A stretch of DNA of 64,000 bases from Schmidtea polychroa (Eukaryota), in assembly GCA_044892525.1 (NCBI GenBank), contig CM097888.1:12028001-12092000 (forward strand). The letters are read 5' to 3'. Below the pieces are notes generated by a model. It saw only the letters and a list, made by a program, of their open reading frames with translations. It was not told the DNA's origin and did no database searches. The position numbers were made by a program, and so were the translations under genes. This document shows positions 1,902 through 54,092 of this stretch, in pieces. Each line of letters begins with the position of its first letter. Positions within the stretch are counted from its first letter, which is position 1.

Positions 1902-4900
1902 GGCCGGCTTTAGTTGGAAGCGGTGGATGCAAAGCATCGGGGCGCCTCTCGGAAAGGGCGCTATAAAATTTAGAATTTTAGTTTCTTTTTAATATTTAAC
2001 AAAAAAGCCATTAACAAATTTTTTTTAATAAGAATTTTTTTTTTTTTAAATAAAATTTCCTTGAAAAACTACTGGCCTACTAGTTTTCGAAGTGTTTAAG
2101 AATTGTTTAATTATTTCGCAAAACAAAATAAATTATACATGCATAAATTTATTTTGAAACGGCCTGCTATATTCGGTTTAGTTATTTCGATTAAAAAAAT
2201 TAATGCTAAAAAAATTATTTTAAAAGTCTACCAGTTCTATTCAGTTTTCAATCAGTTCAGTTGTTATTTGGTAAACTTTTTTCGCTAATAAAAAAAAATT
2301 TAATATTAAAATTTTAATAGTAAAATAAAAAAGTGTTCAGTACAGTTTAATAGTAAAAAAGTGTTTTGTTTCAGTACATTAGTTATTTTGCGGAATTGAA
2401 TCATTGTACGGTGGTAGGTATTATTTAATTATTTTTATCTTTACTTCTAAAATTTATATTTTTTTAATTGAAAAATTTTTATTAGCTTACCTATATCATA
2501 AAATATGAATTCAAAGACAAAATTATCCGGGTGTGAAAATCGAAAACGAAAGGCGAAGAGAGAGTTGGAGGAACAAAAAAATCAGGGAAGCCTTAACCAA
2601 TATTTAAAAAAAGCAAATTTGACAATACCTACAATAACGTTAACGGATGATCAGATTATTCCAGAGGATAGCACAAATGGTGAAGTTAGAAATAATGCCA
2701 CTAATGAGACACAATCTATAAATTTACAAACAGAAATAACATCTTCATCTAACAAAGAGCTTCAAACCATACATTTAACTGAAACTATAAGTAATAGTGC
2801 TGATTTTCATTCAATTGATCCCGCAACTTGGCCTAAATTTATTAATGATAAAATTAGAAAAATTATTATTGAGCAAGGACCAATGCAAATAAGGAAAGAA
2901 GTTTATCCCCGTGATAATGATGGACGAAGTTTTACTAATTATTATTACAATCGTAAATTACCTAATAATGAAATTATACCAAGATCATGGTTAGTTTATT
3001 CAAGTTCAGCAAACCGTGTTTTCTGTTTTTGTTGTAAATTGTTTATAAATCAAATAGAAGGAAACCAGCATTTGATTATAAATGGTTTTAGTTGCTGGAG
3101 AAATTTGTCAAAAACACTTGCAGCTCATGAAGTTAGTACATTACATGTTAATTGTTTTTTAAAGTGGACTCAATTAAAAAAGAAAATGAACAACTTAACT
3201 ACAATAGATGCTGAACTCGTAAAAGTATACGCAGTTGAAAAGAAACATTGGTACGCTGTTTTGGAGAGAATTGTCAAAATCATAAAATATCTTGCCAGAC
3301 AATGCCTGTCTCTGCGTGGCTCGTCAGATACTATCTATGAAAAAAATAACGGTAACTTTTTAAAATTTGTAGAACTTTTTTCTAAATTTGACATAGTAAT
3401 AGCAAATCATTTAGCAAAGATACAAAAAAAGGAGACACAAACAGTTCATTATTTAGGCAAAACTATACAAAATGAAATAATATCGTTGATCTCTTCGAAA
3501 ATTTTGCAAAATATTATTCAAATGATAATTAATGCCAAATATTTTTCTCTAATATTAGATTGCACTCCTGATATTAGTCATAACGAACAAATGACATTTA
3601 TAGCCAGATTTGTCAATAAAGATGAAAATAATGAAGTTGCAATAAGCGAACATTTTTTGGGATTTTTAAAAGTATCTGACTCCACAGGAAAAGGTTTAGC
3701 AACTTATCTTATTGACAACATTAAAGATTTAGGTTTGAATATTAATGATCTACGTGGACAAGGTTACGATAATGGCGCAAATATGCATGGGAAAAATAAT
3801 GGGGTCCAAAAACGTATTTTAAATTTGAATTCTCGTGCATTTTTCGTCCCATGTGCTGCACATACACTTAATTTAGTAGTGAATGATGCAGCCAAAATTA
3901 ACACAGAATCATTTAGTTTCTTTTCCACTATTCAAACAATTTATAATTTCTTTAGCGCTTCAACAAAACGATGGGAGTTCTTAAAAAAAAATACTAAAAT
4001 TACAGTAAAACCTTTGTCAGCCACCAGGTGGGAATCAAGAGTCGATGCCCTTCGTCCACTTAGGTTTTAAATAGCTGAAATTTTAGATGCTTTAGTTGAC
4101 ATTTATGAAAACCTAGAAATAGATAATAATACAAAGCATGAAGCTAAGGCTGTGGCTTTCAAAATAAAAGAGTATGAATTTATATGTTCAGTGGTTATTT
4201 GGTACGATGTTTTAAGTAAAGTTAACGTTGTTAGTAAACTGCTCCAAAATCCAAATCAAAACTTAAATGTTTCTTCAGTTGCGTTAAATAGTCTTATTAA
4301 ATTTATTGAAGAATATAGATCCGATGAAAATTTTAGTCTTATTCTTCAAACGGCAGACAATATAGCAGCTGATTTAGAAATACCTGCGAAATTCAAAGAT
4401 AATACGTTACGAAGAAGAAAGAAAAAAATTTTTGGTTATGAATCTGTAGACGAAACGCCAGTTGATCCGATACTTAAATATAAAATATCATTTTTTCTGC
4501 CAATTTTAGATATTACTATCAATTCTTTAAAAGAAAGGTTTAATCTTTTCACAAAATATAGTGAAAAATTTGAATTTATACATAATATAAATATGAAATT
4601 AACAAAATGGATGATAATACATTAAAAAAACATTGTTCTGATTTAGAAATAATGCTAACCGATGGCGAGAAAAAAGATATATCTGCAACAGAATTATTTA
4701 ATGAAATAAAAATAGCAAAGGAATTTTTGAAAGACTTTGAAATCCCACTAAACATCTTGCAATATATATATATAAAAATCTACTGGATTCCATTTTTCCC
4801 AATTTTGTAATTGCTATTAAAATATTTTTAACTTTACCAGTTTCAGTTGCTAGCGGAGAACGATCTTTTTCGAAGCTTAAACTAATTAAAAATTATTTAA

Positions 4901-5303: not shown

Positions 5304-5699
5304 CACACATATATACATATATGGATATAATTTAAATTAATAATATTGATGTCGTTTTCAGGGGGGGGGATGTTACTAAAAATAGATTTTAGTGATTTTC
5401 CGTAATTTTATTGGAAGATAGGGCCATTGAAACTAAATTTAGAGATAGGGGAATCCCAAAATCAATAATTTGTTTTATAATTTTATTTCCATGAAATAAA
5501 GATAATTNNNNNNNNNNNNNNNNNNNNNNNNNNNNNNNNNNNNNNNNNNNNNNNNNNNNNNNNNNNNNNNNNNNNNNNNNNNNNNNNNNNNNNNNNNNNN
5601 NNNNNNNNNNNNNNNNNNNNNNNNNNNNNNNNNNNNNNNNNNNNNNNNNNNNNATGTTAATAATTATAATAAATGTAAGTTTATATATTTTTATAAGAT

Positions 5700-10055: not shown

Positions 10056-10331
10056 GTTTTTAAATAGGTTTTTAAATAGGTTTTTTTAATATTGTATGTA
10101 TTGATTGNNNNNNNNNNNNNNNNNNNNNNNNNNNNNNNNNNNNNNNNNNNNNNNNNNNNNNNNNNNNNNNNNNNNNNNNNNNNNNNNNNNNNNNNNNNNN
10201 NNNNNNNNNNNNNNNNNNNNNNNNNNNNNNNNNNNNNNNNNNNNNNNNNNNNNNNNNNNNNNNNNNNNNNNNNNNNNNNNNNNNNNNNNNNNNNNNNNNN
10301 NNNNNNNNNNNNNNNNNNNNNNNNNNNNNNN

Positions 10332-10407: not shown

Positions 10408-11388
10408 CCCTGTGTTTCAAAGACCTTTATTTTCAAATAATAATATCTCTTGGCGGGAACTCTCGAATTTCAAATTTAAAAAAATTGAACTTTACATTAA
10501 AAAATTTGACCTTGAAAAGAATTTTAAAAATTTCCCCTAGGGGGGAGGGGTATGTGATCCATCTTCTGGCCTTTCGATTGGAGCATTTTATTAATAGGTA
10601 TTTTGATTATTTGGGGTTCTCATACAGTTCGGCTCATTACACAACTCCGGTTTTCTAAACTGCTCAGGTTTCCCATTAGCGAATTAATTAATTTTAATTA
10701 CTTTGTTATTTCGTTATAACTTTCACTAAATTTTTATCATCATATTTGAGTTCGCTTCATGATTCAGCTTTCAAGCATACCCGTTTCTCACGAACAATAT
10801 TAAGTTTTAATGAATTTTAATTAATTTTTGCACTTTTATTATTTTGGTTTTTTTTTTATGTTACCCTTGCTTCTATTTTTTGTATGTATGTTGTCTATTC
10901 TTATCATGTTAAAGTATTCAAAAGAACACCTTGCTCCTAAAAAATATTTTGTAACGTGCCAATGTCTAGTCTTCTCTATCCGGTTCATATTTCTGACTTT
11001 TCGATATTCAATTTGAAATATACAGAATACTTGCAGTACATAATTTTAATATTATTCTTGACTAACCACCATTTAACAAAATTCAGTAAATTTTACGATA
11101 TATCCAAAAATAATTTATAGAAAAACAATATTTAGATAAGCCTAAATTTAAGCAACAAAACATAAAAATTATTAATGCTACCAAAATGATTTATAGTCGC
11201 TAAATTCACGTAGCACTGTTACAGAAAATTACAGACCGGTGTATTGATTATTCTCTAAATGTCAGCACCACTCTCTATGCATACAAACCGTATCAAATCC
11301 GAAACAAACAATATATTTTACATAATTTTTATAAAATCATTTTGATTGTTCAGTATTGAATTTTACAATATCATTCGATTTTATAATA

Positions 11389-11785
11389 ATGAAAAATATA
11401 GGATTTACATTATCATTAATTATTTGTTTCGTTGCCTTTTTACATACAAATTGCCAAAGTGACTTAATAAAGAAATATATTGAGAAAACTATTGACAATG
11501 AAGTTTCAAAGGCCTGTGGAAAAATGGAATGTAATTTGAATAACCAAAGTAAGAATTATTTTTATTAATTGATTTATTTGTAACAATTTAGTTTTGGAAA
11601 AATTCATTAATGCTAAATGCTGTATTAATGGCGCCGAAGCAAGTTGTTGCTATGGATTAACAAAGTTAAGCATAATTATAATTTCTGTTGTGACAAGTTT
11701 TATTATTCTAATCATTCTTATAAGTATTTGTGTTTGTTTATTCCAAAAACGTTCGTCACCTAGATACCAAAGGGCAGCCTTTTAA
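11389..11785 (+). CDS. Small Shisa-like single-pass membrane protein (117 aa, 2 exons)
   Basis: Exon 11389-11548, 43-nt GT-AG intron (11549-11591), exon 11592-11785. Protein: MKNIGFTLSLIICFVAFLHTNCQSDLIKKYIEKTIDNEVSKACGKMECNLNNQILEKFINAKCCINGAEASCCYGLTKLSIIIISVVTSFIILIILISICVCLFQKRSSPRYQRAAF. It has a signal peptide, a C-C-CC-CC ectodomain, one TM helix, a juxtamembrane CxC and a short tail. Confidence 0.8.
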
Positions 11786-12251
11786 TTTTGGAGGATAATA
11801 ATTTTCAATTTCATTAAAAACAAATAGATTATCATCACTTTTTGTAATTGTTATTTTAATAATGTCTCGTGTCATTTTTAATAAAATATTTGTATTAAAT
11901 TTCTTTAATAAAATATTTTTGGAAATACCACCAATACTTGTAATAGTTTTTACTATTCGCAATATTTTTAAAATATAAATTGACCTATGTTCTTTTAAAT
12001 TTTGAGCTGTCTCAAAAATCATATATATATAGATATGCATCATAACAAAAATTAATATTAACATAATTTACTAAAATACATTTATTATATAAACTTTAAA
12101 AAGCAAAAACTGTGATCATAAAGTTTTACTACATAAAAGAAAAAGTAAAATCAAGCATACCTGGTTTGAAATTACTAAACTTCTCAAGTTAGTTTAAAAT
12201 TTAATCTTAAGTTGGCATGAAAAGTTGAAAAATTACTGCCAGAGCTGCCTA

Positions 12252-13060
12252 CACCAAACATCACTGAGAACCGTTTCCTATAATATAACAAAAAAATAAA
12301 TGATCTTACATTATAGAAACATAAAAACATACATGTTACACTATAGAAATCTAAAATGTGGAAGAAAAATTAAAAACTGCACACAAGCAAAACATATACT
12401 AAAAACACATACAAACTTTTGATTCATAGAAATGCACCGCTTAGATACGTTTCTATAACTTTATTTTAGAAAAAAAAAGATCGCTGCAAATTTTTAAAAA
12501 TATATTTTTAATGAAATTATCAAGAGCAGATGAATTTGGTTCAATGTCTTTTCAATCCAGATTTGATTTCATGAAAGAAGCCCCTCAAATTGAGCTCAGA
12601 AAAAAAATTACAAAAATTAAAAAAGTTATTTTATTCATATTCGTCGATTTTTCCCAAAATGTTTTAGAAAAATACATATTTTTGGTGATTGATTTATTTA
12701 TTTAATTATAATTAAAAATATATCTGACTCCCATTTTTTTGAAATAATTCCAAAATACATAAAGATAAATGTCATAAAATTCCTAAAAACATGAAAATTA
12801 ATTAAAAATAATTTATAATTATACTGTTGATTAAAAGTAATATTTAAGAACTTGAATAATGATCTCATATCTATATGGATCAAAATTCAAGTCTTAAAAT
12901 TTACTTAAAGTTTAACATCTTACCTGAAAGTCATTTGTAAAATGGCTAAAATAAATTTTCAAAATATGATGAGAAATCATGATTCATTAAATTGGTGAGT
13001 GAGCAATTGCTCTACATGTCAACCACGACAATTAAGAATGTATCTCAGTGGTGTTTGGTG
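12252..13060 (-). mobile_element. Non-autonomous TIR element L (Tc1/mariner-like, TA-flanked) carrying a miRNA-like hairpin
   Basis: 18-bp TIRs CACCAAACATCACTGAGA (12252) and TCTCAGTGGTGTTTGGTG (ends 13060), 1 mismatch, with TA on both sides (12250-51, 13061-62). The interior is homologous to element R in inverted orientation. Confidence 0.65.
12837..12906 (-). ncRNA. bantam: bantam/miR-80-family-like pre-miRNA hairpin, copy 1 (predicted mature 12868-12847)
   Basis: Minus strand reads AGTAAATTTTAAGACTTGAATTTTGATCCATATAGATA-TGAGATCATTATTCAAGTTCTT-AAATATTACT, a ~30-bp imperfect stem. The 3' arm begins UGAGAUCAUU (bantam seed GAGAUCA). It lies 18 nt downstream of a CAG/GTAAG donor at 12924. Confidence 0.7.
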
Positions 13061-13064
13061 TATA

Positions 13065-14052
13065 CACCTAACCGCGAAAGTTAACATTGTCTATAATATA
13101 CGTTGGTGTACACACCAGCTGAGGTGAGTCACCAATTATATGACAATGTTAACTTAATTTCATTTATTCAATTTTCCAAAATTCGTTTAAAGGTAAGTTT
13201 TTGAATTAAAGTAATTTTTAGGACTTGAATTTTGATTTTATATTATTATGAGATCATTATTCAAGTTCTTAAATATTACTGTTAGTCAGCATTTATAATA
13301 TTGATAATATATAACATTGATAATTAAATTTCAGGTGTTTTTTTAGGAATTTTATGGTATTTTATTTGGATTTATTTGGATTTATTTGGATTTATTTCGT
13401 AAAAATGTAAGTTAGATATTTTTATAATTATAAATAAGTAAAGTAATCACTAAACATTTATTTTTTAAAGACATTTAGTAAAGAATGGATAAAATATTTT
13501 TTAAGTTTTTGTAATCTTTTTTCGAATTTTGTCTATTTCTGTAATTCTATGAAAATATTAATTTGTTAAAATAATTTATTAAAATTTACGATTTGCGATT
13601 TTTTTCCTGCAAATTCAAAGATGTCGAAGGATCTTCTTCAATATCTGTAAATCTAAAGAAATTTTATATTCTAAATTATTTTTTAATTAAATCTTACGAT
13701 TTATTTACTTCTTTTTCCCTAAAGCTCAACGTAGAGCAGTCGGAATCTGATTCAAAAGTTTTTTTTTACATAATTTTTTAAATAATTTAAAAATATTGAT
13801 ATGTTAATTATATGTTAATCAATCTGAATTTCGCATGAAAAACACTTTACTTAATTTTGTATGTATTTTTCATTATGTGTGCTGTGCTTGTATGCTTTAT
13901 TATTTTCTCTCACTTTTTAGATTCCTATAATAAATATGTTAAATTTCGCGGCATTAAATTTCTACACACAGGTAAGTTTTGGTGTTCCTATAATATATAT
14001 TTATTGATTTTTTTTTTAGATTATAGATAATGTTATATTTCGCGGTTAGGTG
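13065..14052 (+). mobile_element. Non-autonomous TIR element R (Tc1/mariner-like, TA-flanked) carrying a miRNA-like hairpin
   Basis: 33-bp TIRs at 13065-13097 (CACCTAACCGCGAAAGTTAACATTGTCTATAAT) and 14020-14052, 3 mismatches, with TA on both sides (13063-64, 14053-54). Partial TIR copies occur internally at 13142-13155 and about 13944. Confidence 0.7.
13210..13280 (+). ncRNA. bantam: bantam/miR-80-family-like pre-miRNA hairpin, copy 2 (predicted mature 13249-13270)
   Basis: AGTAATTTTTAGGACTTGAATTTTGATTTTATATTATTA-TGAGATCATTATTCAAGTTCTT-AAATATTACT forms a ~33-bp imperfect stem with a 4-nt loop and ~10 bp of lower stem below the 22-mer. The 22-mer is identical to copy 1. It lies 17 nt downstream of an AAG/GTAAG donor at 13193. 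Confidence 0.72.
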
Positions 14053-14699
14053 TATATAATTATTCCGACCAAACAGGTGGGAGTATGATTCCATTGATCG
14101 ATGATCAGACTTGTTTTACTTCAAATATACAACAGAAATTTTCCTTTCTTTTTTATTCAATTTTTGTTTTAATATAATTTTACTTCCATTTTTGTTTATT
14201 ATTTTTATTTGTTTGTTTATTAAAAGATTTTTAATTAAAATTTGTTTACTTGATATTTTATTAGGATTTTAAATAAACTTGCGATTTTCGTGCTACGTGG
14301 CTTGCTCTGACATCACATAAAAATCTTAATTAATTTTACAATAATTTATTGGCCTTCTGGTCTAACAATATTGAGCACTATTCCGTGGAACTACGGAAAA
14401 ATTGATGGCACATACTCAATGTAATGCAAAATTTGGAAGTTTCAGAACGGTAACAATTACGTTGATTTACGAGCAAATGAGAGATTACTGTGAAATGACG
14501 TTGCTCAAGAAAATTACAGGATTTGTTTCACTTTACTGTTGTAAAATTCCTTTCCCAAAGAAAAATGATGAATTTGATAATACAAGTATTTTACCAAAAT
14601 TTGTTTTTCGTTTGTTTGAGTTTTTATTTGAAACATTCACTGTATTCTTTCTTGTGTTCTGGTATGATTGTTGTGTTTTTGTTGGGGGGTTGTGAAAGA

Positions 14700-16300
14700 C
14701 TTTGTTGGTTTGAATTTCGTTGTTAGAAATGTTGTGTGTTGTTTGAATGTTATATTGATATGGTTTTAATCTGCGAATTTTTCTGCTTTTTTTCTGTTTA
14801 TTAATAGTGTATCCACATTTTTGTTTAGATCGATTAGTTTGTAGGAGCCTTCGTATCTTGATTCGAAACCGCTAGTGTAAGGTTTTGTTATTAGTACCGT
14901 ATCAACGATTATGTTTGGTTGTAACTTTTGTTGTCTTTGTTTTTTAGCAGTGTTTTTGGTACGTTTAGATTGGTTTTTATTTTGTCAACAAGCATTTTGT
15001 TTGTGTTTTAAACTTTTCTATTAGATATGGGAGGTTTGTTGAATGTCTGAAAGTTAATTGGCTTGGGATTTTATTATTTATTGATGAAGAGTTATTTCTT
15101 AATTCGATTAGGATTTTTGGAAGTTTGTCTAACCAGTTTCTGTCACTGGCTTTAGTTCTAATTACTTGTTTTAAAGATAAATCTATTTTACCATTCCACT
15201 GTGAGTTGTACGCTGTTGTTCTGACTTTCTGTACTTTATATTTCTCGCAGAGTTTTTTAATATACCGGATTTGAATTGTCTGACTTGGCCGCTTAATAGT
15301 GTTTGGCGCATCCATATCTTGCGAACCAATTCAGTTCTCTGTTTTCGTAAACCGTCTTGGCGGTGGTTTTTTTGATTGGTATTATTTCGAACCAGTTTGA
15401 TCATTGTTAGTAAGTATTTGTAATTGTTGTTAAGTGGGAGCACTCCTACTATATCCACGTGAACGGTTTCGAATGGTTTTGCCTTTGGGAATTCAACTTT
15501 TGTTTTTGTAAATCTTTTTGTTGTTTTGTTTTTTCTGGCTTCTGAAATGATTGTATTGCTTCTATCTTAGTATTATCTGTTTATATGCCGTCTTTATTTA
15601 TTGTGTGCCCCAGAAACATCACTTCTTTCCTAAATATTTAACATTTTTCGGGGTTCAATCTTAGTCCTGCTGTTGAGATGTTCCCTAGAACTCTTCCAGA
15701 TACTTTATAGTGTTCTTCTTCTGTCTTTGTGAATATTAGTATGTCGTCTAAATATACCATCATCCCATCTTACCACAAATCTTTCAATACTTTCGTCATT
15801 AATTCTTGAAATGTTTCTGGTGCCGCTGCAATACCGAACGGCATCCGGTTAAAACAGAACTGTCCTTCTTTTGTTGAGAATGCTGTTTTCTCTTGAGATT
15901 CTTTATCCAACTTCACTTGGTAATAAGCATTTCCCAAGTCAATCAAGCTAAAATATCTGGATCCGTGTAAGATGTCTAAAATTTTTTCTACATTTGGCAT
16001 TGGAAATGCTTGTCTTTCTGTTATCTTGTTTAATTATCTGAAGTCTAGACAAAGCCTGATGTCTTTTTTCTCTTTCTTCCATACACAAACTAAAGGTGTG
16101 TTCCACGGTGAATTACACTTTATAATTATTCCGTTGTTTTCTAGATTTTTTATTGCTTCCTCAATCTTGTCTTCCAAATTTATTGGTTGACGTCTCGGTT
16201 TAATCATTATTGGCTCTCCTTTTGTGATGATCTTATGTTTAATCAGATTGGTACACCCAATATCCCATTTATCTGCCATGAAAACGTTCTTGTTTGCCTG
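14700..16300 (-). pseudogene. Degraded, internally deleted Ty3/gypsy pol (RT plus integrase fragments)
   Basis: RT fragments ADKWD..KPRRQP..SPWNTPLVCV..LCLDFR*LN..DLGNAYYQV..RMPFG..VYLDDIL are closely related to the RT at 29600-30300. They join directly to integrase fragments (FETVHVDIVGVLP; TTAYNSQWNGKI; RYEGSYKL). Many stops and frameshifts. Confidence 0.85.
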
Positions 16301-16379: not shown

Positions 16380-16481
16380 AATTTATTAAAAAGAGAGTTT
16401 GAAGACTATAAATCAGTAATATATCGATGTTTATTGATATATTACTGATTTATAGTCTTCAAACTCTCTTTTTAATAAATT
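16380..16481. repeat. Palindromic mini-element, copy 1 (46-bp arms, 10-nt loop)
   Basis: AATTTATTAAAAAGAGAGTTTGAAGACTATAAATCAGTAATATATC, loop GATGTTTATT, then the exact reverse complement. Related copies at 53054-53107 and 58900-58992. Confidence 0.9.
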
Positions 16482-16937
16482 CAATGGAAAAAATAATCAT
16501 TGGTGAAATTCGAAGAAAAAAAAGTTGCGACTTTCCTTTTGAATAGTGCTTGAGCTCTTGCTAGGTTACGAATTCCCCATAATTCATTTGGGTTCACTCC
16601 ACTGTGTAGCAATTCATTTTGGAAATCATGACCCACTTCATAACAGCAATTTACTACCACTTTGATATATTAATGATAATCAACGAAAAGTTAATAAATG
16701 ATGTTCCACTGTCTCAGAAAGTTGAGTANNNNNNNNNNNNNNNNNNNNNNNNNNNNNNNNNNNNNNNNNNNNNNNNNNNNNNNNNNNNNNNNNNNNNNNN
16801 NNNNNNNNNNNNNNNNNNNNNNNNNNNNNNNNNNNNNNNNNNNNNNNNNNNNNNNNNNTAATTTTAGGAAAATAACGTTTGGCAAAAATATATACTATAT
16901 ATACATAATATATAAAATATACATACATATATATATA

Positions 16938-19900
16938 CAGCGGCGGCTCTAGCATTAGTAGCGCCCCGATGCGAAACTAATTTTAGACGCCCATTTATTT
17001 TATTGGTTTTTTGGAATTAACGTAATTTAATTTGCAATATTAAATTTGTAATAAAAACATTAAAAAATTAATAATAATTCTTTTCCAAGTGAAATACAGG
17101 TTTTATTTTGTTTATATATTTTTTTATTTTATTGAAACAATATTATAATATACAAAAATTACATAACATACATATATTTTGTATAAAAATTGACAAAACT
17201 ATTATTCTAGATATTTACTTTTCTAGCTTTTAAACTGGCAAATTCATCAATTAAATTATGTATATCTAATTTGTCGCATATATCACTTTCAATCGATATC
17301 ATTGCTAAACCAACTAATCTTTCTTGTGAAATTGTTGATCTTAAATAATTTTTAATTAGTTTAAGCTTCGAAAAAGATCGTTCTCCGCTAGCAACTGAAA
17401 CTGGTAAAGTTAAAAATATTTTAATAGCAATTACAAAATTGGGAAAAATGGAATCCAGTAGATTTTTATATATATATATATATATATTGCAAGACGTTTA
17501 GTGGGTTTTCAAAGTCTTTCAAAAATTCCTTTGCTATTTTTATTTCATTAAATAATTCTGTTGCAGATATATCTTTTTTCTCGCCATCGGTTAGCATTTT
17601 TTCTAAATCAGAACAATGTTTTTTTAATGTATTATCATCCATTTTGTTAATTTCTTTTATATTATGTATAAATTCAAATTTTTCACTATATTTTGTGAAA
17701 AGATTAAACCTTTCTTTTAAAGAATTGATAGTAATATCTAAAATTGGCAGAAAAAATGATATTTTATATTTAAGTATCGGATCAACTGGCGTTTCGTCTA
17801 CAGATTCATAACCAAAAATTTTTTTCTTTCTTCTTCGTAACGTATTATCTTTGAATTTCGCAGGTATTTCTAAATCAGCTGCTATATTGTCTGCCGTTTG
17901 AAGAATAAGACTAAAATTTTCATCGGATCTATATTCTTCAATAAATTTAATAAGACTATTTAACGCAACTGAAGAAACATTTAAGTTTTGATTTGGATTT
18001 TGGAGCAGTTTACTAACAACGTTAACTTTACTTAAAACATCGTACCAAATAACCACTGAACATATAAATTCATACTCTTTTATTTTGAAAGCCACAGCCT
18101 TAGCTTCATGCTTTGTATTATTATCTATTTCTAGGTTTTCATAAATGTCAACTAAAGCATCTAAAATTTCAGCTATTTAAAACCTAAGTGGACGAAGGGC
18201 ATCGACTCTTGATTCCCACCTGGTGGCTGACAAAGGTTTTACTGTAATTTTAGTATTTTTTTTAAGAACTCCCATCGTTTTGTTGAAGCGCTAAAGAAAT
18301 TATAAATTGTTTGAATAGTGGAAAAGAAACTAAATGATTCTGTGTTAATTTTGGCTGCATCATTCACTACTAAATTAAGTGTATGTGCAGCACATGGGAC
18401 GAAAAATGCACGAGAATTCAAATTTAAAATACGTTTTTGAACCCCATTATTTTTCCCATGCATATTTGCGCCATTATCGTAACCTTGTCCACGTAGATCA
18501 TTAATATTCAAACCTAAATCTTTAATGTTGTCAATAAGATAAGTTGCTAAACCTTTTCCTGTGGAGTCAGATACTTTTAAAAATCCCAAAAAATGTTCGC
18601 TTATTGCAACTTCATTATTTTCATCTTTATTGACAAATCTGGCTATAAATGTCATTTGTTCGTTATGACTAATATCAGGAGTGCAATCTAATATTAGAGA
18701 AAAGTATTTGGCATTAATTATCATTTGAATAATATTTTGCAAAATTTTCGAAGAGATCAACGATATTATTTCATTTTGTATAGTTTTGCCTAAATAATGA
18801 ACTGTTTGTGTCTCCTTTTTTTGTATCTTTGCTAAATGATTTGCTATTACTATGTCAAATTTAGAAAAAAGTTCTACAAATTTTAAAAAGTTACCGTTAT
18901 TTTTTTCATAGATAGTATCTGACGAGCCACGCAGAGACAGGCATTGTCTGGTAAGATATTTTATGATTTTGACAATTCTCTCCAAAACAGCGTACCAATG
19001 TTTCTTTTCAACTGCGTATACTTTTACGAGTTCAGCATCTATTGTAGTTAAGTTGTTCATTTTCTTTTTTAATTGAGTCCACTTTAAAAAACAATTAACA
19101 TGTAATGTACTAACTTCATGAGCTGCAAGTGTTTTTGACAAATTTCTCCAGCAACTAAAACCATTTATAATCAAATGCTGGTTTCCTTCTATTTGATTTA
19201 TAAACAATTTACAACAAAAACAGAAAACACGGTTTGCTGAACTTGAATAAACTAACCATGATCTTGGTATAATTTCATTATTAGGTAATTTACGATTGTA
19301 ATAATAATTAGTAAAACTTCGTCCATCATCATCACGGGGATAAACTTCTTTCCTTATTTGCATTGGTCCTTGCTCAATAATAATTTTTCTAATTTTATCA
19401 TTAATAAATTTAGGCCAAGTTGCGGGATCAATTGAATGAAAATCAGCACTATTACTTATAGTTTCAGTTAAATGTATGGTTTGAAGCTCTTTGTTAGATG
19501 AAGATGTTATTTCTGTTTGTAAATTTATAGATTGTGTCTCATTAGTGGCATTATTTCTAACTTCACCATTTGTGCTATCATCTGGAATAATCTGATCATC
19601 CGTTAACGTTATTGTAGGTATTGTCAAATTTGCTTTTTTTAAATATTGGTTAAGGCTTCCCTGATTTTTTTGTTCCTCCAACTCTCTCTTCGCCTTTCGT
19701 TTTCGATTTTCACACCCGGATAATTTTGTCTTTGAATTCATATTTTATGATATAGGTAAGCTAATAAAAATTTTTTAATTAAAAAAATATAAATTTTAGA
19801 AGTAAAGATAAAAATAATTAAATAATACCTACCACCGTACAATGATTCAATTCCGCAAAATAACTAATGTACTGAAACAAAACACTTTTTTACTATTAAA

Positions 19901-20334: not shown

Positions 20335-20609
20335 NNNNNNNNNNNNNNNNNNNNNNNNNNNNNNNNNNNNNNNNNNNNNNNNNNNNNNNNNNNNNNNNNN
20401 NNNNNNNNNNNNNNNNNNNNNNNNNNNNNNNNNNNNNNNNNNNNNNNNNNNNNNNNNNNNNNNNNNNNNNNNNNNNNNNNNNNNNNNNNNNNNNNNNNNN
20501 NNNNNNNNNNNNTAAAAATATAACCACCTTTCCCCCTAAAGACCCCAAGTTGTATAATAACAAGATTGCTAGTCGTCCTATAATCCTAAAAATTTTTATA
20601 ATTTTGCAT

Positions 20610-27353: not shown

Positions 27354-27691
27354 TGAAAGGGTAGAATTCACGTTTAAGTTAAAACTGGATACTGCTAATA
27401 AACATTTAAATTGTATATATCAGATTACATAAATTTTTATATAAATATTTAAATTAATAAATTAAAGTAAGTTTAAAATATAAAAATAAATAAAAATATA
27501 TTAAATATTAAAATAAATTAAACCAGCATTGAAATCAGCATCAAAATTAAAATAATAAAAAAGCCTCGAACAGATTGTTTGAATATTACAAAAAAGCGCA
27601 GTTTTGTGAATAAAATAAATTTAGTAATTTTATTTGTTTAATTTATTAATTATGGAGATTGAGAATGAATTCGACGTTGTTGCGGCTAACA
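27354..27691 (+). repeat. 5' LTR of gypsy B
   Basis: 338-bp direct repeat of 32111-32448. Confidence 0.95.
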
Positions 27692-28731
27692 TGGCGACCA
27701 CGCCAACAAACCTATTGATTAGCAGGTTGCTACCAGAAAGATTCCACAGAGACGACGACCTGGAAGAATTCATCAAAGAATGCCAAAATTTTTTTAATAT
27801 TACGAAAACATCTGTCAAGATGCAGATGATTCTGGTTACCACACTGTTGGAGAAACCATTATACGATGAATATGAAAAAGCAGAAGGAAAAACATTTGAA
27901 GAGAAGCTCAGATCGGCATTTTCGAGGCCAAAATCATTATTCGAAGACTTAAAGGAAGCTCTAAATTATGACCAAGGATCCGATTCAGCAGACCACTTTA
28001 TCGAAAAAGTAGAGAAATTAACCAAAAGATTACTGCGACATGAGTGGAACGAAGAAGAAATTAAAAAGTGCCTACTCATGAATGGGGCTCGAGAGAAAAA
28101 AGTTAAAAAGGAAATAGAAATGCAAGAACTAAAGACGTCAGAAGAAATTAAAAGCACAATTAAAAAAGTTGAGAAAGTGAATAAAGCTATAAACCATGTT
28201 AACTCCATCCGACCTATAACATATATGAAACCCGTCAAAACCTACAGAGATGCCGTTCAAAGACCCGCACAGACAAATACAATGCCAATGTCAAAACCAT
28301 TGAAAGCGACTAAGAACGTCGTATGCTGGACATGCCAAAAAGCAGGTCATTTAAGCCGAGAATGTACTATGAAGAGGAGGATTCAGTGTTTTGGATGTGG
28401 AGTATATGGACACGTACGCCGAGAATGTCCAAACATTCAGTGTAGGAGATGTCATCTACAAGGTCACAAAGAAACTGAATGCTATACAAACCTAGAAAGA
28501 TTTAAGCCGAAAATGAATCATTACGGAAGAAATAATGCAGCACACCGAAATAAAGGGGGCCGATTTCAACAGAACAATCAGTATAATAGAAGAGAGGTAG
28601 CAGCAATTGGAAATCAAGATGCAAACTATCAACTGAATTATTCAAGTGAAGCCGAAGAGAAATACGACGAAATGCAATACCCAAACGAGGAAGCTCCATC
28701 ACAGGAGGCGATGATAGGAGCCATTTATTAG
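27652..28731 (+). CDS. gag: Gag of gypsy B with three CCHC zinc knuckles
   Basis: Open ORF from the ATG at 27652 (inside the LTR). Knuckles CWTCQKAGHLSREC, CFGCGVYGHVRREC and CRRCHLQGHKETEC. Confidence 0.9.
   Translation: MEIENEFDVVAANMATTPTNLLISRLLPERFHRDDDLEEFIKECQNFFNITKTSVKMQMILVTTLLEKPLYDEYEKAEGKTFEEKLRSAFSRPKSLFEDLKEALNYDQGSDSADHFIEKVEKLTKRLLRHEWNEEEIKKCLLMNGAREKKVKKEIEMQELKTSEEIKSTIKKVEKVNKAINHVNSIRPITYMKPVKTYRDAVQRPAQTNTMPMSKPLKATKNVVCWTCQKAGHLSRECTMKRRIQCFGCGVYGHVRRECPNIQCRRCHLQGHKETECYTNLERFKPKMNHYGRNNAAHRNKGGRFQQNNQYNRREVAAIGNQDANYQLNYSSEAEEKYDEMQYPNEEAPSQEAMIGAIY
27692..27704 (+). promoter_or_regulatory. Primer-binding site, probably tRNA-Arg(UCG)
   Basis: TGGCGACCACG is complementary to the ...CGUGGUCG-CCA 3' end seen in animal tRNA-Arg(UCG). 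An identical 13-mer follows the LTR of gypsy C. Confidence 0.7.
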
Positions 28732-31700
28732 GTAATTTTGATTTTGATGAAAATGCTGGTTATAATAATGTAAATAATTTTTATAATGTAAATAATTTGA
28801 ATAATGTAAATAATTTGATTAGTGTAGATAATTTTAATATTTTTAGTAAAGATTTATGTAATAATATGGATGATAGGACTAATTTTAATGTTTATAAAAG
28901 TAGCAGTATAGATCATAGAAATGAAAACAACAAAATAATGTGTAGCGATGAAAGAACAGGAGAAAAGTATATAGTTTCCTAAAAAAGTCATTTGATATGA
29001 ATGAAGATAAGATTGAGTGGATTAATGAAATTTCCAATAGTATAAAGAACAAAGTGGAGCAAAATATATTTACGAAAGACGAATGGAAAGGACCTCGTAT
29101 GACTTATCATAAAATGCAAGGTAGACCAAGTATAACACTTGAAATTCAGTGGCGCGGAATTGAGTGTCTGTTAGATACAGGAGCACGAGTTAATGTAATG
29201 TCTAAAGCAGTACTGGATAAATTGGACAAAGTCGAGATAATAAAAAACAGATGAAATGCTAAGGTGTGCAAATGACAGTAAATTGGAGACTATAGGAAAA
29301 GTTCAAATTGAGGTAAAGATAGGGAAGCTAACAAAAATAGTGACCTTTACCGTCGTACAAAACATTGTCCCAGATGTTATTGGGGGTATAGAATTACAGA
29401 AACAATTCGGTATTGAATTAAGATGGATTCAAGAAGGTGAAATGATATCTAACGAACGTATATGTGAAATTGATGATAAATTTGGGAGGAATATTACAAA
29501 TGAAGAAAGATTCCAACATGCGATAGAGAAGTTGAAAGTAAAAGAAGATAAATTGCTTGTAGAAATTATCAAGAGAAATAAATGTGTTTTCATGGCTGAC
29601 AAGTGGGATGTTGGATGCACTGATTTAATTCAACATAAAATTGAAACAAATGGCGGACCAATAATGATAAAGCCCAGAAGACAGCCTATAAACTTGGAAG
29701 AGAAAATAAACATGGCCATTAAAAATCTGGAGGATAATAATATTATAAGGAAGTGTAATTCACCTTGGAATACCCCTTTAGTGTGCGTTTGGAAAAAGGA
29801 AAAGAAGGATATCAGACTCTGTTTGGACTTTAGACAACTTAACAAAATTACTGAAAGACAAGCGTTCCCGATGCCTAACGTTGACGAGATCTTAGATGCT
29901 TTGCATGGTACTAGATATTTTAGTTCTATTGACCTTGGAAACGCATACTATCAGGTGAAGTTGGATAGAGATTCACAGGAGAAAACAGCTTTTTCAACGA
30001 AAGAGGGACAATTCTGTTTCAACCGAATGCCGTTTGGCATCGCGGCAGCACCAGGAACCTTTCAAGAGCTCATGACGAAGATATTAAAGGATTTATGGAA
30101 AGACGGGGTAATGGTTTATCTGGACGATATATTAATTTTTACTAACACAATGGAAGAACACTATAAACTGCTGGAAAGAGTATTGCAGAAAATCGCAGAA
30201 GCTAAACTAAGAATTAATCCTGAAAAATGTCAAATACTGAAAAGCGAAGTGAAATTCTTAGGCCATATTATAAATAGAGACGGCATCCAAACGGATCAGA
30301 GCAAAATTGAAGCTATTCAATCATTTCAAAGGCCGAAATGTGTGAAAAATTTAAGGAGTTTCTTGGGTATTTGCAACTATTATCGAAAATTTATTAAAGA
30401 ATACGCAAAGAAGGCAAGAGCTTTAGAAAGTATATGTGGTAAAAATAGCGACAAAATAATATGGAATGAAAATTGTGAGCAGGCTTTTGAGAATATGAAG
30501 TTGGCATTAATAACCGCACCGATTTTGGTATTTCCTGATTTTAAGAAAGAATTCATACTGGATACGGATGCAAGTTTCGATACAATCGGCGCAGTCTTAT
30601 CACAGAAGAATGACATGGGATATGAGCAAGTTATCGCTTATGGCTCACATGCGATGAATGACCACGAAAGAGGCTATTGTATTACAAGAAAGGAACTCCT
30701 GGCTATATATTATTTTTGTCGGCATTTCAATCACTATTTATATGGAAAAAGATTTACACTACGTACAGATCATAAAGCAATAACATTTATGCTAACCACG
30801 AAGAAGCCAATTACAGCTCAATTCCAGACCTGGATAAACTATTTAAGTAGCCTTGATATAAAAATGGAATTTAGAAAGGGTACACTACATACTAACGCAG
30901 ACATGTTATCGAGGAAAACGTGTGGCACATGTGTACAATGTCTTATGGAACACGATAATCCTAAAATGGGAAGAATGAAAACCAGAATGTCAAATATAAT
31001 GACTGAAGACAAAGGAGAGAAATGGCAAATGAATAGTGATGAAATAGAGGAGATTAAAAATAAAATAAGAACGCAAAAGAGTGGAAGGTTTATAATAGAG
31101 GATAATATTATTTATACCAAAGATAAAAGAATATGGATACCAGAGAGCAAAATAAGAGAAATGATTAACAAAACACATCTATTACTGTGCCATGCTGGAG
31201 TTGACAAAGTTATCAAATACATACAAAACAATTTTGATATGAGAGATCTAATAAAGGAAGTAAAAACGACAATATCAAATTGCGAATCGTGTCAAAAAGT
31301 TAAAGTTGTAACTACAAAGACGAAAGAGAAACCAAAAGTACTTGAAGCATCCGAACCTTCGAGAAAATATATATGGACATATGTGGCCCAATGAAAGAAA
31401 CATTTAACAGGAAAAGATACATTTGCGCAATAATCGACCATTACAGCAAATACATCTCGTTAACAGCTATAAATAAACAGGATGAAGAGACAATTGGGAA
31501 GATATTGTTAAACAACTGGATTCTAAAATTTGGGGCACCCAAAGAACTACATGTAGATTGCGGGAAAACATTCGAAGCTAATAGCATAAAGAATATAAGC
31601 AAAAATGCAGGGTTCGAGATAGTGTATTCGAGTCCATATCATCATAATACGAATGGTATAATCGAAAGACAATTCCGGACAATAAGAGATTTTATTAATG

Positions 31701-32113
31701 CATCGCTGAAAGACGGAAATACAAAAGACTGGGCAGACCTTATCCCAGATATAGAATATACACTCAACGTAACCATTCAAAAAACAACGGGAGTAAGCCC
31801 AGCTGAAATTATTTTTGGTAGGAAAATTGATAGATCAAAATGGTATAATGATAGTAGAATCAACAGGAACGATATCGCATTGAAAATTGAAAGTAAAAGA
31901 CAAAATGAGGAAACAACAACTGCAAGGAGGTTGGATATTGGAGACAAAGTGTTAATCAAACGAGAAATACGAAACAAGGATCAAGATAGATATGAAGGAC
32001 CATACACGGTAACAAAACGAATACACGATCGCAGTTATATGCTGAGAGATAAAAGTGGGAAGTCTTTAATCAGGAATATTGAAAAGATTAAAGAATTTAA
32101 AGAAGGGGGATGA
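28680..32113 (+). pseudogene. pol: Pol of gypsy B (protease, RT, RNase H, integrase), reached by -1 frameshift; three 1-nt indels
   Basis: Motifs LLDTGARVNVM, YLDDIL, LDTDASF..AYGS..ELLAI..TDH, HLLLCH..CESC, DICGP and DCGKTFE..SSPYHHNTNGIIER. Frame breaks at about 28980, 29250 and 31370, each in a homopolymer. Confidence 0.92.
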
Positions 32114-34825: not shown

Positions 34826-34987
34826 TTAAAACAATAAAATGATAATTTAAGCCTTTTGCTGCAAATAATGTATTTAATGAAAGAATTTTCGACTATACTA
34901 TCGTATGGACTATCGTATAATCGAAAATTCTTTCATTAAATACATTATTTGCAGCAAAAGGCTTAAATTATCATTTTATTGTTTTAA
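34826..34987. repeat. Perfect inverted repeat (67-bp arms, 28-bp spacer)
   Basis: 34826-34892 is the exact reverse complement of 34921-34987. The spacer holds two ACTATCGTAT copies. Confidence 0.9.
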
Positions 34988-41990: not shown

Positions 41991-43289
41991 GAACAGGGAA
42001 TACTAAATATATATATTAATAAAGCAAATCGGCCTATAGGCCGATGAGCTGCGTTAAAAATCTGAATTTCTAAAATATATAAAGATTTAAACAAAATAAA
42101 TTCCGTTACGTGTGATTCCGTCATCCAGTACCGACTGCTAGAGAATGCAAGAGATTTCTTCCATCTCGACACAATTTTCGCCGAAGCTTCCCCATCGACT
42201 CTGTGACCATGCGCATGGAATCTATATTGTGGATATCGAATGATCGAACTAGCTGTTATTGAATCTTTCGCTTAAATCTATTAGAATGTAGTAACTTATG
42301 TGGAGTACTTCTGGGTTGTGTAGTGAGCAATGTTCTTAAATGTATTTCTTTGAATAAATGTTGAGTAACGTAAAGATGGTGGTCCAATTTTCGGAGGTTC
42401 TCTGTGGCGTGGTTAAATCGGATAAGTGCATGATGAGGTATGGGTGATTAATAATGAAACCAAATAATATTGATCGGTGCTTCGAATAATGAACAAGACG
42501 TAGGTCCTTCTATCGGCCGTTAGGAACGGAGAAGTCGAGATAGGGTGAAGGAGTAGTCCTAAGTCAGGGGATCACCTGCTTCATCCTATCCCACCATCAA
42601 GGCACAGCACAAACATGATGTAAATCATGGGTGTCATGGTGAGAAAATGGACATGTAGGTTCTTGACTTGCGGTCAACTAAGAGTGTACGTTTGTTTTTT
42701 GGCCTGACTTTCATCCCCTGGTGACGAGTGAATGCTTGTTANNNNNNNNNNNNNNNNNNNNNNNNNNNNNNNNNNNNNNNNNNNNNNNNNNNNNNNNNNN
42801 NNNNNNNNNNNNNNNNNNNNNNNNNNNNNNNNNNNNNNNNNNNNNNNNNNNNNNNNNNNNNNNNNNNNNNNNNNNNNNNNNNNNNNNNNNNNNNNNNNNN
42901 NNNNNNNNNNNNNNNNNNNNNNNNNNNNNNNNNNNNNNNNNNNNNNNNNNNNNNNNNNNNNNNNNNNNNNNNNNNNNNNNNNNNNNNNNNNNNNNNNNNN
43001 NNNNNNNNNNNNNNNNNNNNNNNNNNNNNNNNNNNNNNNNNNNNNNNNNNNNNNNNNNNNNNNNNNNNNNNNNNNNNNNNNNNNNNNNNNNNNNNNNNNN
43101 NNNNNNNNNNNNNNNNNNNNNNNNNNNNNNNNNNNNNNNNNNNNATTATTTTTGTAGATTGTTAATGGTGAAATCTGAAATTAATAATTATCTTATTCAT
43201 AAATTAATTATTATTATTATCGTTATAGTAAATGGGAATTGTTATATACATGCAGATTCGAGGACGAATCTAAATTAAACAGAAAGATA

Positions 43290-44670: not shown

Positions 44671-45918
44671 ATGATTTCAGAAGTTGAAGACATCATAACT
44701 GGCGACCACGCCAAGGAAATCAATGCGATAGGAAAAAAGAAAGGAACTAAGAATATGTTAGATTCCTTGTCAAAACAAGCACGTGAGATGCTAAATTTTA
44801 ATGTAAGAAAGTTTGACGGTAAAGTTGGATCTGAAGCTGAACTTTGGCTAAAGGATATTATGGAATGGCTGAGAATAGAAGATCAAAGTCTAGTAGACGC
44901 ATTGGATCTTTTGTTGACAGATGCGGCATCGATGTTATGGGAAGCGGCGAAAATAACGAAGATGACCGATGAAATGGCAAAAGAGTGGTTTATAGAAACT
45001 TTTACAGTAAGGAAAACCATTACTAACAAGATTGTGGAACTAGCTCAAATTCAGCAAGAGAGAGATGAAAGATTCCAAGTCTTCGAAATACGAGTAAGAA
45101 GTTTAGTTAAAAGTGTATTTAGCTCTGGAATGTCTGATGAACAGATTGTTCGAGACATTATTTCAAACAGAGCGAAAGACGATAGAGTAAAAGAAATATT
45201 CTTATCAGGGAAAGTGACAAGTTTTGAAGATGCCAGGGATATGGCAAAAATTCAGGAGAAGATCGAGATGACGAATGACAATAAATTCAATATTGATGCC
45301 ATAAGAAGAGACTCTTACGCATCAGTGATGAAAAATGGTAAATTCGATGGTAGACGAGACCAAAGAACAATTGTGAAGACAGCTGCACATCAACGCGACG
45401 AACACCGAGAGATTAATCATGAGAGGAATAGACCTGGTAATGGTCGGTTTGTACCAATTGTAAATGAAGACAAGATTGAAAATGAGCGGTATAGAGGACG
45501 ATATGAGACAGGAGAACCCGAGAGAAGAATACCTACAGTATCGCTTAAAGATATTGCAAGAAGGTTATTTAATGACAGCAAAGGAAGAGATTCGCCTCAT
45601 CCAGTGAAACTGACATCAGGTCAGTGTTTTTGTTGTGGAGAAAAAGGGCGCCGGCGTTTTGAATGTCCTATGAAAGACAAATGTCTAATCTGTGGAAAAG
45701 AAGGTCATGGATTCAGAGATTGTTTTTTGCTTAAAAATAGAAAGGGATATCAGAAGAGAGTGGCATGTATTTACGAAGAAGATCACGAAAGAAATAATGG
45801 TGATTTCACAGAAGATTTATACAGTAATTACGAAGAAACGATAAAGAAATCAATGGATAAACCAAAAAACAAGGACGATCCCATTGCTTTCATTTCGTCA
45901 GTGGGGTCGACACAATAA
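44671..45918 (+). CDS. gag: Gag of gypsy C (two CCHC-type knuckles, the first with His replaced by Arg)
   Basis: Open 415-aa ORF from an ATG inside the LTR. Motifs KFDG..WLKDI..A..LL, CFCCGEKGRRRFEC and CLICGKEGHGFRDC. Confidence 0.88.
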   Translation: MISEVEDIITGDHAKEINAIGKKKGTKNMLDSLSKQAREMLNFNVRKFDGKVGSEAELWLKDIMEWLRIEDQSLVDALDLLLTDAASMLWEAAKITKMTDEMAKEWFIETFTVRKTITNKIVELAQIQQERDERFQVFEIRVRSLVKSVFSSGMSDEQIVRDIISNRAKDDRVKEIFLSGKVTSFEDARDMAKIQEKIEMTNDNKFNIDAIRRDSYASVMKNGKFDGRRDQRTIVKTAAHQRDEHREINHERNRPGNGRFVPIVNEDKIENERYRGRYETGEPERRIPTVSLKDIARRLFNDSKGRDSPHPVKLTSGQCFCCGEKGRRRFECPMKDKCLICGKEGHGFRDCFLLKNRKGYQKRVACIYEEDHERNNGDFTEDLYSNYEETIKKSMDKPKNKDDPIAFISSVGSTQ

Positions 45919-53986: not shown

Positions 53987-54092
53987 GAATGTAAATTGAC
54001 TGATATGTCTGTATGAAATAATTACGAATGTCTGATTTTAAAATCAGACATTCGTAATTATTTCATGTAGACATATCAGTCAATTTACATTC
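53987..54092. repeat. 106-bp loopless palindrome
   Basis: Centre at 54039/54040 (TCTGATTTT-AAAATCAGA). The 53-bp arms differ at only 2 adjacent positions. Confidence 0.92.

What the first reader, a model, noticed from the sequence alone, without database searches (positions are those of the whole stretch)
12837..13280. Pair of head-to-head, intronic bantam-family-like pre-miRNA hairpins with an identical 22-mer
Seen in the sequence: two ~70-nt hairpins on opposite strands (12906-12837 minus; 13210-13280 plus) share an invariant 34-nt 3' arm, while the loop and surrounding AT-rich DNA differ by roughly 20-30%. The 22-mer UGAGAUCAUUAUUCAAGUUCUU sits in the 3' arm with about 10 bp of lower stem beneath it, the canonical Drosha geometry. 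A G-U pair in one copy is A-U in the other. Each hairpin lies 17-18 nt after an AG/GTAAG donor. Established: bantam (Drosophila UGAGAUCAUUUUGAAAGCUGAUU) and C. elegans miR-80/81/82 start UGAGAUCAU, are 3p products, and are protostome-specific. Inference: these are functional, duplicated bantam-family miRNA genes in a compact-intron protostome, invisible to the ORF track.
Basis: partly seen in the sequence, partly recalled or inferred. Interest (0 to 1): 0.9.

Follow-up and report, generated by a model that had tools for sequence, protein, structure and literature searches.

The report
Known planarian mir-753 microRNA gene pair
The two hairpins are real, selectively conserved microRNA genes. 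They belong to the already catalogued planarian mir-753 family, which shares its seed with bantam, so this is a correct but ordinary annotation and not a discovery.

Summary
The 22-mer UGAGAUCAUUAUUCAAGUUCUU occurs exactly twice, at 13249-13270 (+) and 12867-12846 (-). Each copy lies in the 3' arm of a stable hairpin (-32.4 and -27.2 kcal/mol, z about -8).

Rfam identifies both as mir-753 (RF04089). The left copy scores 65.2 bits, above the gathering score of 62. The right copy scores 57.6 bits, E 4e-12. The bantam model reaches only 24-27 bits against a cut-off of 61.

mir-753a to d are catalogued Schmidtea mediterranea precursors, and miR-753b-3p carries the bantam seed GAGAUCA. The 22-mer matches Dugesia bantam-c at 18 of 22 positions.

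The hairpins sit in an old inverted duplication (12599-12956 and 13162-13523, 74% identical, with outer homology out to 12278-14026). Its one significant invariant run is the 34 nt covering the mature strand and lower stem (p about 0.002). All three stem substitutions keep pairing.

Best reading: two functional paralogues transcribed outward from the middle of the palindrome. "Intronic" is plausible but untested. AGGTAAG lies 17 nt upstream of each hairpin and U-rich AG sites lie downstream, yet the two cannot share one host strand.

No relatives could be fetched, and no small-RNA data are available here. Novelty is low.

The parts
12835..12906 (-). Left mir-753 hairpin (pri/pre-miRNA stem)
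   Evidence: MFE -27.2 kcal/mol, z -7.7. Rfam RF04089 65.2 bits at 12841-12901, above the gathering score of 62. Pair table.
12846..12867 (-). Predicted mature 3p miRNA, seed GAGAUCA
   Evidence: Exact 22-mer. 3' arm position. 21/22 match to the mir-753 consensus, with the one difference compensated in the 5' arm.
12874..12893 (-). Predicted 5p (star) strand, inferred from 2-nt overhang geometry
   Evidence: Derived from the pair table. Inference only, no reads.
13210..13280 (+). Right mir-753 hairpin
   Evidence: MFE -32.4, z -8.3. The antisense strand reaches only -15.5. Rfam RF04089 57.6 bits, E 4e-12, below the gathering score of 62.
13249..13270 (+). Predicted mature 3p miRNA, identical to the left copy
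13222..13242 (+). Predicted 5p (star) strand
   Evidence: Derived from the pair table. Inference.
12599..12956 (-). Left arm of the inverted duplication
   Evidence: Local alignment to 13162-13523: 386 columns, 74% identity. Also.
13162..13523 (+). Right arm of the inverted duplication
12957..13161 (.). GC-richer middle (35% GC against 18% in the arms). Candidate site of divergent transcription starts.
   Evidence: Composition. The promoter role is inferred only.
13078..13155 (.). Inner palindrome / third hairpin with a 14-bp perfect basal stem
   Evidence: MFE -34.9 (+) and -36.4 (-), z about -6. Self-hit. No Rfam match.
12919..12925 (-). AGGTAAG, candidate 5' splice site 17 nt upstream of the left hairpin
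   Evidence: Function untested.
13191..13197 (+). AGGTAAG, candidate 5' splice site 17 nt upstream of the right hairpin
   Evidence: Function untested.
12783..12789 (-). TTTTTAG, candidate 3' splice site inside a 17-nt block shared by both arms
   Evidence: The block length is within chance expectation.
13340..13346 (+). TTTTTAG, candidate 3' splice site (right arm)
12826..12829 (-). CNNC (CAAC) starting 17 nt after the 3p end
   Evidence: C frequency in the arms is about 8-10%.
13287..13290 (+). CNNC (CAGC) starting 17 nt after the 3p end
12278..12418 (-). Outer segment of the same inverted duplication
   Evidence: Aligns to 13853-14026 at 83% identity, score 74 against a shuffle null of 32 +/- 3.5. 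Also.
13853..14026 (+). Outer segment, right side. Holds a third outward-facing AGGTAAG at 13970-13976.

Best explanation
The locus holds two paralogous genes of the planarian microRNA family mir-753, a lineage-specific offshoot of the bantam seed family. An old inverted duplication placed them head to head.

Each hairpin is read on its outward-facing strand, minus for the left copy and plus for the right copy. Transcription most likely starts in or near the GC-richer middle of the palindrome. Drosha would cut about 10-11 bp above the base of the stem and Dicer near the small AU-rich loop. The 3' arm would then yield the same 22-nt RNA from both genes. Loaded into Argonaute, this RNA represses mRNAs carrying matches to the seed GAGAUCA, the same target class as bantam.

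Shown here: the hairpins, family membership, strand preference, and selective conservation of the mature strand.

Inferred: outward transcription from the middle, splicing of the primary transcripts, the exact cleavage sites, and the targets.
For: Family membership:
- The Rfam mir-753 model matches both hairpins end to end, at 65.2 bits (above the gathering score of 62) and 57.6 bits (E 4e-12).
- Relative to the family consensus, the one change in the mature strand (C to U) is matched by G to A in the opposite arm.

Strand:
- The model scores the outward strands 21-24 bits higher than the antisense strands.
- The right hairpin folds at -32.4 kcal/mol on its outward strand and -15.5 antisense.

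Selection:
- The only significant perfect run between arms that are 74% identical is the 34 nt covering the mature strand and its lower stem (p about 0.002).
- All three substitutions in the 28 paired positions keep pairing and none breaks it.

Processing context:
- Both copies have CNNC starting 17 nt after the 3p end, with different middle bases, in DNA of about 8-10% C.

Separate transcription:
- Folded as one transcript, the whole palindrome becomes a long foldback (-301 or -255 kcal/mol) in which neither small hairpin forms. Separate outward transcripts therefore fit best.
- Three of the window's ten AGGTAAG lie in the palindrome, all facing outward.

Literature:
- sme-mir-753a to d are catalogued precursors.
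- miR-753b-3p has the seed GAGAUCA.
- dja-bantam-c is 18/22 identical to the 22-mer.
Against: - No small-RNA reads, RNA-seq or orthologous loci could be obtained. Expression, 5' end homogeneity and the 2-nt overhangs are therefore untested.
- The right copy falls 4.4 bits below Rfam's gathering score and relies on several G-U pairs.
- The predicted pre-miRNA is short (about 49-51 nt) with a small AU loop.
- The left hairpin folds almost as well antisense (-25.7 against -27.2).
- The middle region is largely itself palindromic and not a clearly unique promoter island.
- The 17-nt and 14-nt shared blocks are within chance expectation.
Confidence: 0.85

Rival explanations
1. The whole palindrome is transcribed as one RNA that folds back on itself. 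It acts as a long hairpin source of endogenous siRNAs and not as two separate microRNA genes.
For: A single transcript of 12590-13535 is predicted to form a long foldback (-301 kcal/mol on the plus strand) in which the two small hairpins pair with each other.
Against: The arms are only 74% identical with 52 gap columns, which makes a poor Dicer substrate. Conservation is concentrated on one 34-nt block and is not spread along the arms. Both small hairpins match a curated miRNA family model on specific strands.
Confidence: 0.05
2. The identity of the 34-nt block reflects a recent short gene-conversion tract in a neutral palindrome, or a repeat or transposon remnant, and not selection on a functional microRNA.
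For: Inverted repeats do undergo conversion. The window is rich in transposons. Only two copies are available for comparison.
Against: The tract coincides exactly with the mature strand plus lower stem of a hairpin that independently matches the mir-753 model. Stem substitutions are all pair-preserving. The 5' arm and loop differ, as expected for a miRNA conservation profile. No further copies of the arm occur in the 64-kb window.
Confidence: 0.05
3. Only the left copy is a working gene. The right copy is a weakened duplicate on its way to loss.
For: The right copy scores below Rfam's gathering score (57.6 against 62). It replaces two C-G pairs and one A-U pair with wobble pairs.
Against: Its hairpin is the more stable of the two (-32.4). 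It has kept all 34 nt unchanged while the flanks diverged, which needs constraint in both lineages. It keeps CNNC at +17.
Confidence: 0.1
4. The hairpins are mirtrons or tailed mirtrons, released by splicing and not by Drosha.
For: Candidate donor 17 nt upstream and candidate acceptor 60-70 nt downstream of each hairpin would define introns of about 141-154 nt.
Against: Neither hairpin end coincides with a splice site. Each hairpin has a 9-10 bp lower stem and CNNC at +17, the features of a Drosha substrate.
Confidence: 0.04

Closest known systems
mir-753 microRNA precursor family (Rfam RF04089; miRBase sme-mir-753a to d of Schmidtea mediterranea)
   Same: Full-length match of both hairpins to the covariance model. 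3p mature strand 21/22 identical to the consensus. Same short hairpin with an AU loop.
   Different: One base pair differs from the consensus (G-C to A-U, compensated). The right copy is 4.4 bits under the gathering score. Whether these two loci are themselves among the catalogued paralogues could not be checked, because no miRBase sequences or coordinates were available.
bantam family (Rfam RF00727, clan CL00091; Drosophila bantam; nematode miR-80/81/82; planarian bantam-a/b/c)
   Same: 3p origin and seed GAGAUCA. The first 12 nt are identical to dja-bantam-c and 18/22 overall, without gaps. Weak but non-random hits to the bantam model (E 0.014 and 0.076 in the 1.3-kb search).
   Different: The bantam precursor model scores only 26.8 and 24 bits against a cut-off of 61. 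The 3' half of the mature strand has diverged (UUCAAGUUCUU against GAAAGCU...). The hairpin is shorter.
Intronic miRNAs and mirtrons
   Same: Splice-like motifs flank each hairpin at short range.
   Different: The hairpin ends are not the splice sites. No host gene was identified. Splicing is untested.
Inverted-repeat hairpin RNA (endo-siRNA) loci
   Same: A 925-nt palindrome that could fold back if read through.
   Different: The arms are too diverged, and selection acts on the small hairpins only.

Membership tests
mir-753 (RF04089) | Covariance-model score at or above the curated gathering score (62 bits) | tested here: met
   The left copy scores 65.2 bits. The right copy scores 57.6 bits, E 4e-12, just below the cut-off, so taken alone it would be inconclusive.
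mir-753 (RF04089) | Mature 3p sequence matching the family consensus, with the hairpin register preserved | tested here: met
   21/22 identity to the consensus, and the single change is compensated in the 5' arm.
mir-753 (RF04089) | Origin in a planarian (Schmidtea) genome | not testable with these tools
   The source of the window is not given. About 29% GC and abundant gypsy and hAT elements are compatible. A look-up of a window protein found no record.
bantam (RF00727 / seed family) | Seed nucleotides 2-8 GAGAUCA on the 3p arm | tested here: met
bantam (RF00727 / seed family) | Precursor matches the bantam covariance model at the gathering score (61 bits) | tested here: not met
   26.8 and 24 bits.
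bantam (RF00727 / seed family) | Sequence similarity beyond the seed to an accepted bantam member | tested here: met
   18/22 ungapped identity to dja-bantam-c, whose sequence is printed in the supplement of PMC7722302. Compared by eye.
Bona fide animal miRNA (general criteria) | Hairpin with at least 16 bp between the arms and no large internal loops | tested here: met
   28 consensus pairs..
Bona fide animal miRNA (general criteria) | Reads from both arms with 2-nt 3' overhangs and a homogeneous 5' end | not testable with these tools
   No small-RNA data available.
Bona fide animal miRNA (general criteria) | Mature strand conserved above its flanks | tested here: met
   34-nt invariant run in arms that are 74% identical, p about 0.002.
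Mirtron | Hairpin ends coincide with the 5' and 3' splice sites | tested here: not met
   The candidate donor is 17 nt upstream and the candidate acceptor about 60-70 nt downstream of the stem.
MITE / transposon-derived repeat | Multiple dispersed copies with terminal repeats and target-site duplication | tested here: not met
   No other copy of the arms occurs in the 64-kb window, and homology continues beyond 12599 and 13523. The genome-wide copy number could not be tested.

The most novel reading that the evidence does not exclude
The 1.75-kb palindrome may be more than two catalogued miRNA genes. Its inner 78-nt palindrome (13078-13155) could serve as a shared bidirectional promoter, with mirrored TATA-like boxes that each fire across the centre. 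It could also be a third, uncatalogued small-RNA hairpin. Occasional read-through would then switch the locus from miRNA production to a long foldback RNA.
Probability: 0.1. Interest if true: 0.4.

Novelty: already known. Interest (0 to 1): 0.15.

Why it matters
The result confirms that reading raw sequence can recover real miRNA genes that an ORF-based scan misses. The family, however, is already in Rfam and miRBase, so nothing new is learned about miRNA biology.

The modest remaining value is descriptive. The locus gives a clean example of the miRNA conservation profile between old inverted paralogues. It also has an architecture (divergent pair, splice-like motifs, CNNC at +17) that could guide annotation of planarian primary miRNA transcripts, which are poorly described.

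Tried and rejected
- **Relatives in public collections.** The 22-mer (C or T at position 18) gave no hit in metagenome contigs. It gave one viral-contig hit (L001) that lies in non-hairpin sequence with no mir-753 match. A looser 5p-gap-3p pattern gave 15 metagenome loci, none folding into a mir-753-like hairpin. A 27-mer gave nothing in the bacterial and archaeal genomes. No comparative test across species was therefore possible.
- **Organism identity.** The exact-protein look-up of the hAT-like ORF is not on record.
- **Literature.** The original planarian miRNA papers (PMC1557691, PMC2714757, PMC2703670) are not held. Searches for miR-753 and for the mature sequence returned only a Toxocara paper and unrelated papers. 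The names sme-mir-753a to d came from a supplement.
- **Host gene.** ORFs between 10.4 and 15.3 kb gave no Pfam match above cut-off.
- **Other miRNAs in the window.** None were found. Sub-threshold hits at 16380-16479 and 53996-54083 are perfect palindromes matching unrelated families. Three further TGAGATCA sites do not fold.
- **The 17-nt shared block as evidence for a conserved acceptor.** Rejected as significant, because runs of about 15 are expected at this identity.
- **Assembly artefact.** Rejected, because the arms differ by 26%.

Full report
**Observation.** The region was read directly. The 22-mer UGAGAUCAUUAUUCAAGUUCUU occurs at 13249-13270 on the plus strand and 12867-12846 on the minus strand. 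It occurs nowhere else in the window, even with three mismatches allowed, and about 0.01 matches are expected by chance.

Each copy lies in the 3' arm of a single-stem hairpin. The right one (13200-13290, +) folds at -32.4 kcal/mol with z -8.3. The left one (12827-12916, -) folds at -27.2 kcal/mol with z -7.7. No shuffle does as well.

In a scan of all 80-nt windows on both strands the mean is -8.9 and the first percentile is -23.4. The two hairpins are therefore unusual but not unique, since several perfect palindromes fold better.

The pair table gives stems 13210:13280 and 12906:12835. There are 9 bp plus a small bulge below the 22-mer, and a small AU-rich apical loop.

**Identity.** Rfam's gathering-threshold scan of the whole window returns a single hit: mir-753 (RF04089) at 12841-12901 (-), with 65.2 bits against a cut-off of 62. 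The sensitive scan adds the right copy at 13215-13275 (+), with 57.6 bits and E 4e-12. It also shows that the antisense strands score 21-24 bits lower.

The bantam model (RF00727) reaches only 26.8 and 24 bits against a cut-off of 61.

Against the mir-753 consensus the mature strand differs at one position (C to U). The opposite arm carries the compensating G to A.

The names sme-mir-753a, b, c and d appear as Schmidtea mediterranea precursors in the supplement of PMC7722302. That study lists no Dugesia japonica miR-753. PMC4842261 gives the seed of miR-753b-3p as GAGAUCA. The Dugesia bantam-c mature sequence printed in the same supplement is identical to the window's 22-mer at 18 of 22 positions without gaps, including the first 12.

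The hairpins are therefore members of a catalogued planarian family that is best seen as a diverged bantam paralogue group. That mir-753 was first described in S. mediterranea is my own recollection. The 'sme-' prefix is consistent with it.

**Genomic setting.** The hairpins are not isolated. They lie in an inverted duplication whose arms are 12956 to 12599 (read on the minus strand) and 13162 to 13523. The alignment has 386 columns, 74% identical overall and 86% identical in ungapped columns.

Homology resumes further out, 12418 to 12278 against 13853 to 14026. Identity there is 83%, with score 74 against a shuffle null of 32 +/- 3.5. The duplicated region therefore spans at least 12278-14026.

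No other copy of the arms exists in the 64 kb. The 26% divergence rules out a fold-back assembly artefact.

The middle (12957-13161) has 35% GC against 18% in the arms. It contains its own 78-nt palindrome at 13078-13155.

The rest of the window is mostly transposon sequence:
- two near-identical hAT-like (DUF4371) ORFs in opposite orientation;
- two gypsy elements;
- a further hAT dimerisation domain.

This content and the 29% GC fit a planarian genome, but the source could not be confirmed.

**Evidence of selection.**
- The longest perfect run between the arms is 34 nt (13247-13280 = 12869-12836). It covers two loop-side bases, the 22-mer and ten bases of lower stem. Shuffling the match/mismatch vector gives p about 0.002.
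- The next runs are 17 nt downstream of the hairpin and 14 nt in the 5' arm. These are about what chance gives at this identity, so only the mature-strand block is statistically meaningful.
- Within the 28 consensus pairs, three positions differ between the copies and all three keep pairing (G-U/A-U and twice U-G/C-G). None is broken.
- Because these are wobble changes, they hold only on the proposed strands. This explains the right copy's -32.4 against -15.5 asymmetry.
- For two sequences to be identical, neither lineage can have changed. Both copies have therefore been constrained since the duplication, unless a conversion tract happened to coincide with the mature strand.

**How it probably works.** Both genes face outward, so they are transcribed divergently.

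Folded as one RNA, the whole palindrome becomes a long foldback (-301 kcal/mol on the plus strand, -255 on the minus strand). In that fold the two small hairpins pair with each other instead of forming locally. Canonical processing is therefore best served by separate transcripts that start in the middle.

I infer a bidirectional promoter there. The inner palindrome carries mirrored TATA-like runs, but this is untested, and such runs are common in AT-rich DNA.

Both copies have CNNC starting 17 nt after the 3p end (CAGC and CAAC), in DNA of roughly 8-10% C. From my own knowledge, this matches the position of the Drosha-enhancing motif described for many bilaterians.

The predicted Drosha and Dicer products would be the 3p 22-mer and 5p strands at 13222-13242 and 12893-12874. 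That gives a rather short pre-miRNA of about 49-51 nt.

The mature RNA would repress mRNAs with GAGAUCA seed matches, overlapping the bantam target set. In S. mediterranea, bantam-a was reported to fall when stem cells are depleted (PMC5671611). Nothing comparable could be found for miR-753.

**The 'intronic' claim.**
- For: AGGTAAG sits at 13191-13197 (+) and 12925-12919 (-), 17 nt before each stem. A third, also outward-facing, lies at 13970-13976. That makes three of only ten in the window.
- For: a U-rich AG (TTTTTAG) follows each hairpin at 13340-13346 and 12789-12783. These sites would define introns of about 154 and 141 nt.
- Against: the block holding the acceptor is not longer than chance allows.
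- Against: no coding host gene was detected.
- Against: two opposite-strand hairpins cannot be introns of a single gene.
- The picture is compatible with spliced non-coding primary transcripts. I put it at roughly 35-40%.
- The hairpins are not mirtrons, because their ends do not coincide with the candidate splice sites.

**Rivals.**
- A long-hairpin siRNA locus is disfavoured by arm divergence and by the focal conservation.
- A neutral palindrome with a conversion tract, or a transposon remnant, is disfavoured by the coincidence with a curated family model, by the pair-preserving changes, and by the absence of further copies.
- A decaying right copy is disfavoured by its intact 34 nt and its stable fold.

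**Limits.** No orthologous or paralogous loci could be fetched. The metagenome, viral and prokaryote-genome scans returned nothing or chance matches. The founding planarian miRNA papers are not held. I could not check whether these two loci are themselves among the miRBase entries. The compensated difference from the Rfam consensus leaves open that they are additional paralogues, or orthologues from a sister species.

**Verdict.** Interest is low.

Noticed in passing
window 13078-13155: A third strong hairpin lies between the two miRNA hairpins. It is 78 nt long with a perfect 14-bp basal stem and folds at about -35 kcal/mol on either strand (z about -6). It has no Rfam match. Its centre (about 13117) differs from the centre of the large arm alignment (about 13058). 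This suggests a 116-nt indel in the left arm and not a unique spacer.
   Followed up: partly
window 13061-13100, 13920-13951, 14017-14075, 12243-12290: A short module recurs here. A TATA-like run is followed by ATGTTAANTTTCGCGG, and in two copies by GGTTAGGTGTATA. 13061-13100 and 14017-14056 are 90% identical in inverted orientation. The motif has 3 matches where 0.24 are expected. It could be a regulatory element or a duplicated exon fragment. The copy at 14017 has no hairpin partner.
   Followed up: partly
window 2505-4810 (+) and 17466-19741 (-): Two near-identical hAT-like transposase ORFs (DUF4371 at residues 192-433 in both) lie in opposite orientation, bracketing the miRNA region at about 8 and 4 kb.
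   Followed up: partly
window 27634-32113 (+) and 44671-49033 (+); 14977-16279 (-); 61328-61978 (+): Two gypsy-type retrotransposons carry zinc-knuckle gag, RT, RNase H and integrase domains. There is also a decayed RT/integrase fragment and a hAT dimerisation domain.
   Followed up: partly
window 16391-16470, 54001-54080, 58901-58980, 34866-34945: Perfect or near-perfect 70-80-nt palindromes (MFE -39 to -54 kcal/mol). Two of them give sub-threshold hits to unrelated miRNA models (MIR1878, mir-4536). They are probably repeat-derived.
   Followed up: no
window 11356-11785 (+): Two adjacent short ORFs. One has a signal-peptide-like start. The other has a cysteine-rich stretch and a transmembrane-like segment, with weak sub-threshold glycophorin-type hits. 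They may be a small two-exon membrane protein gene about 1 kb from the palindrome.
   Followed up: partly
window 5508-5653, 10108-10331, 16729-16858, 20335-20512, 42742-43144, 53303-53569, 60418-60619: Seven runs of N (130-403 nt). They were left untouched, and none touches the miRNA locus.
   Followed up: no
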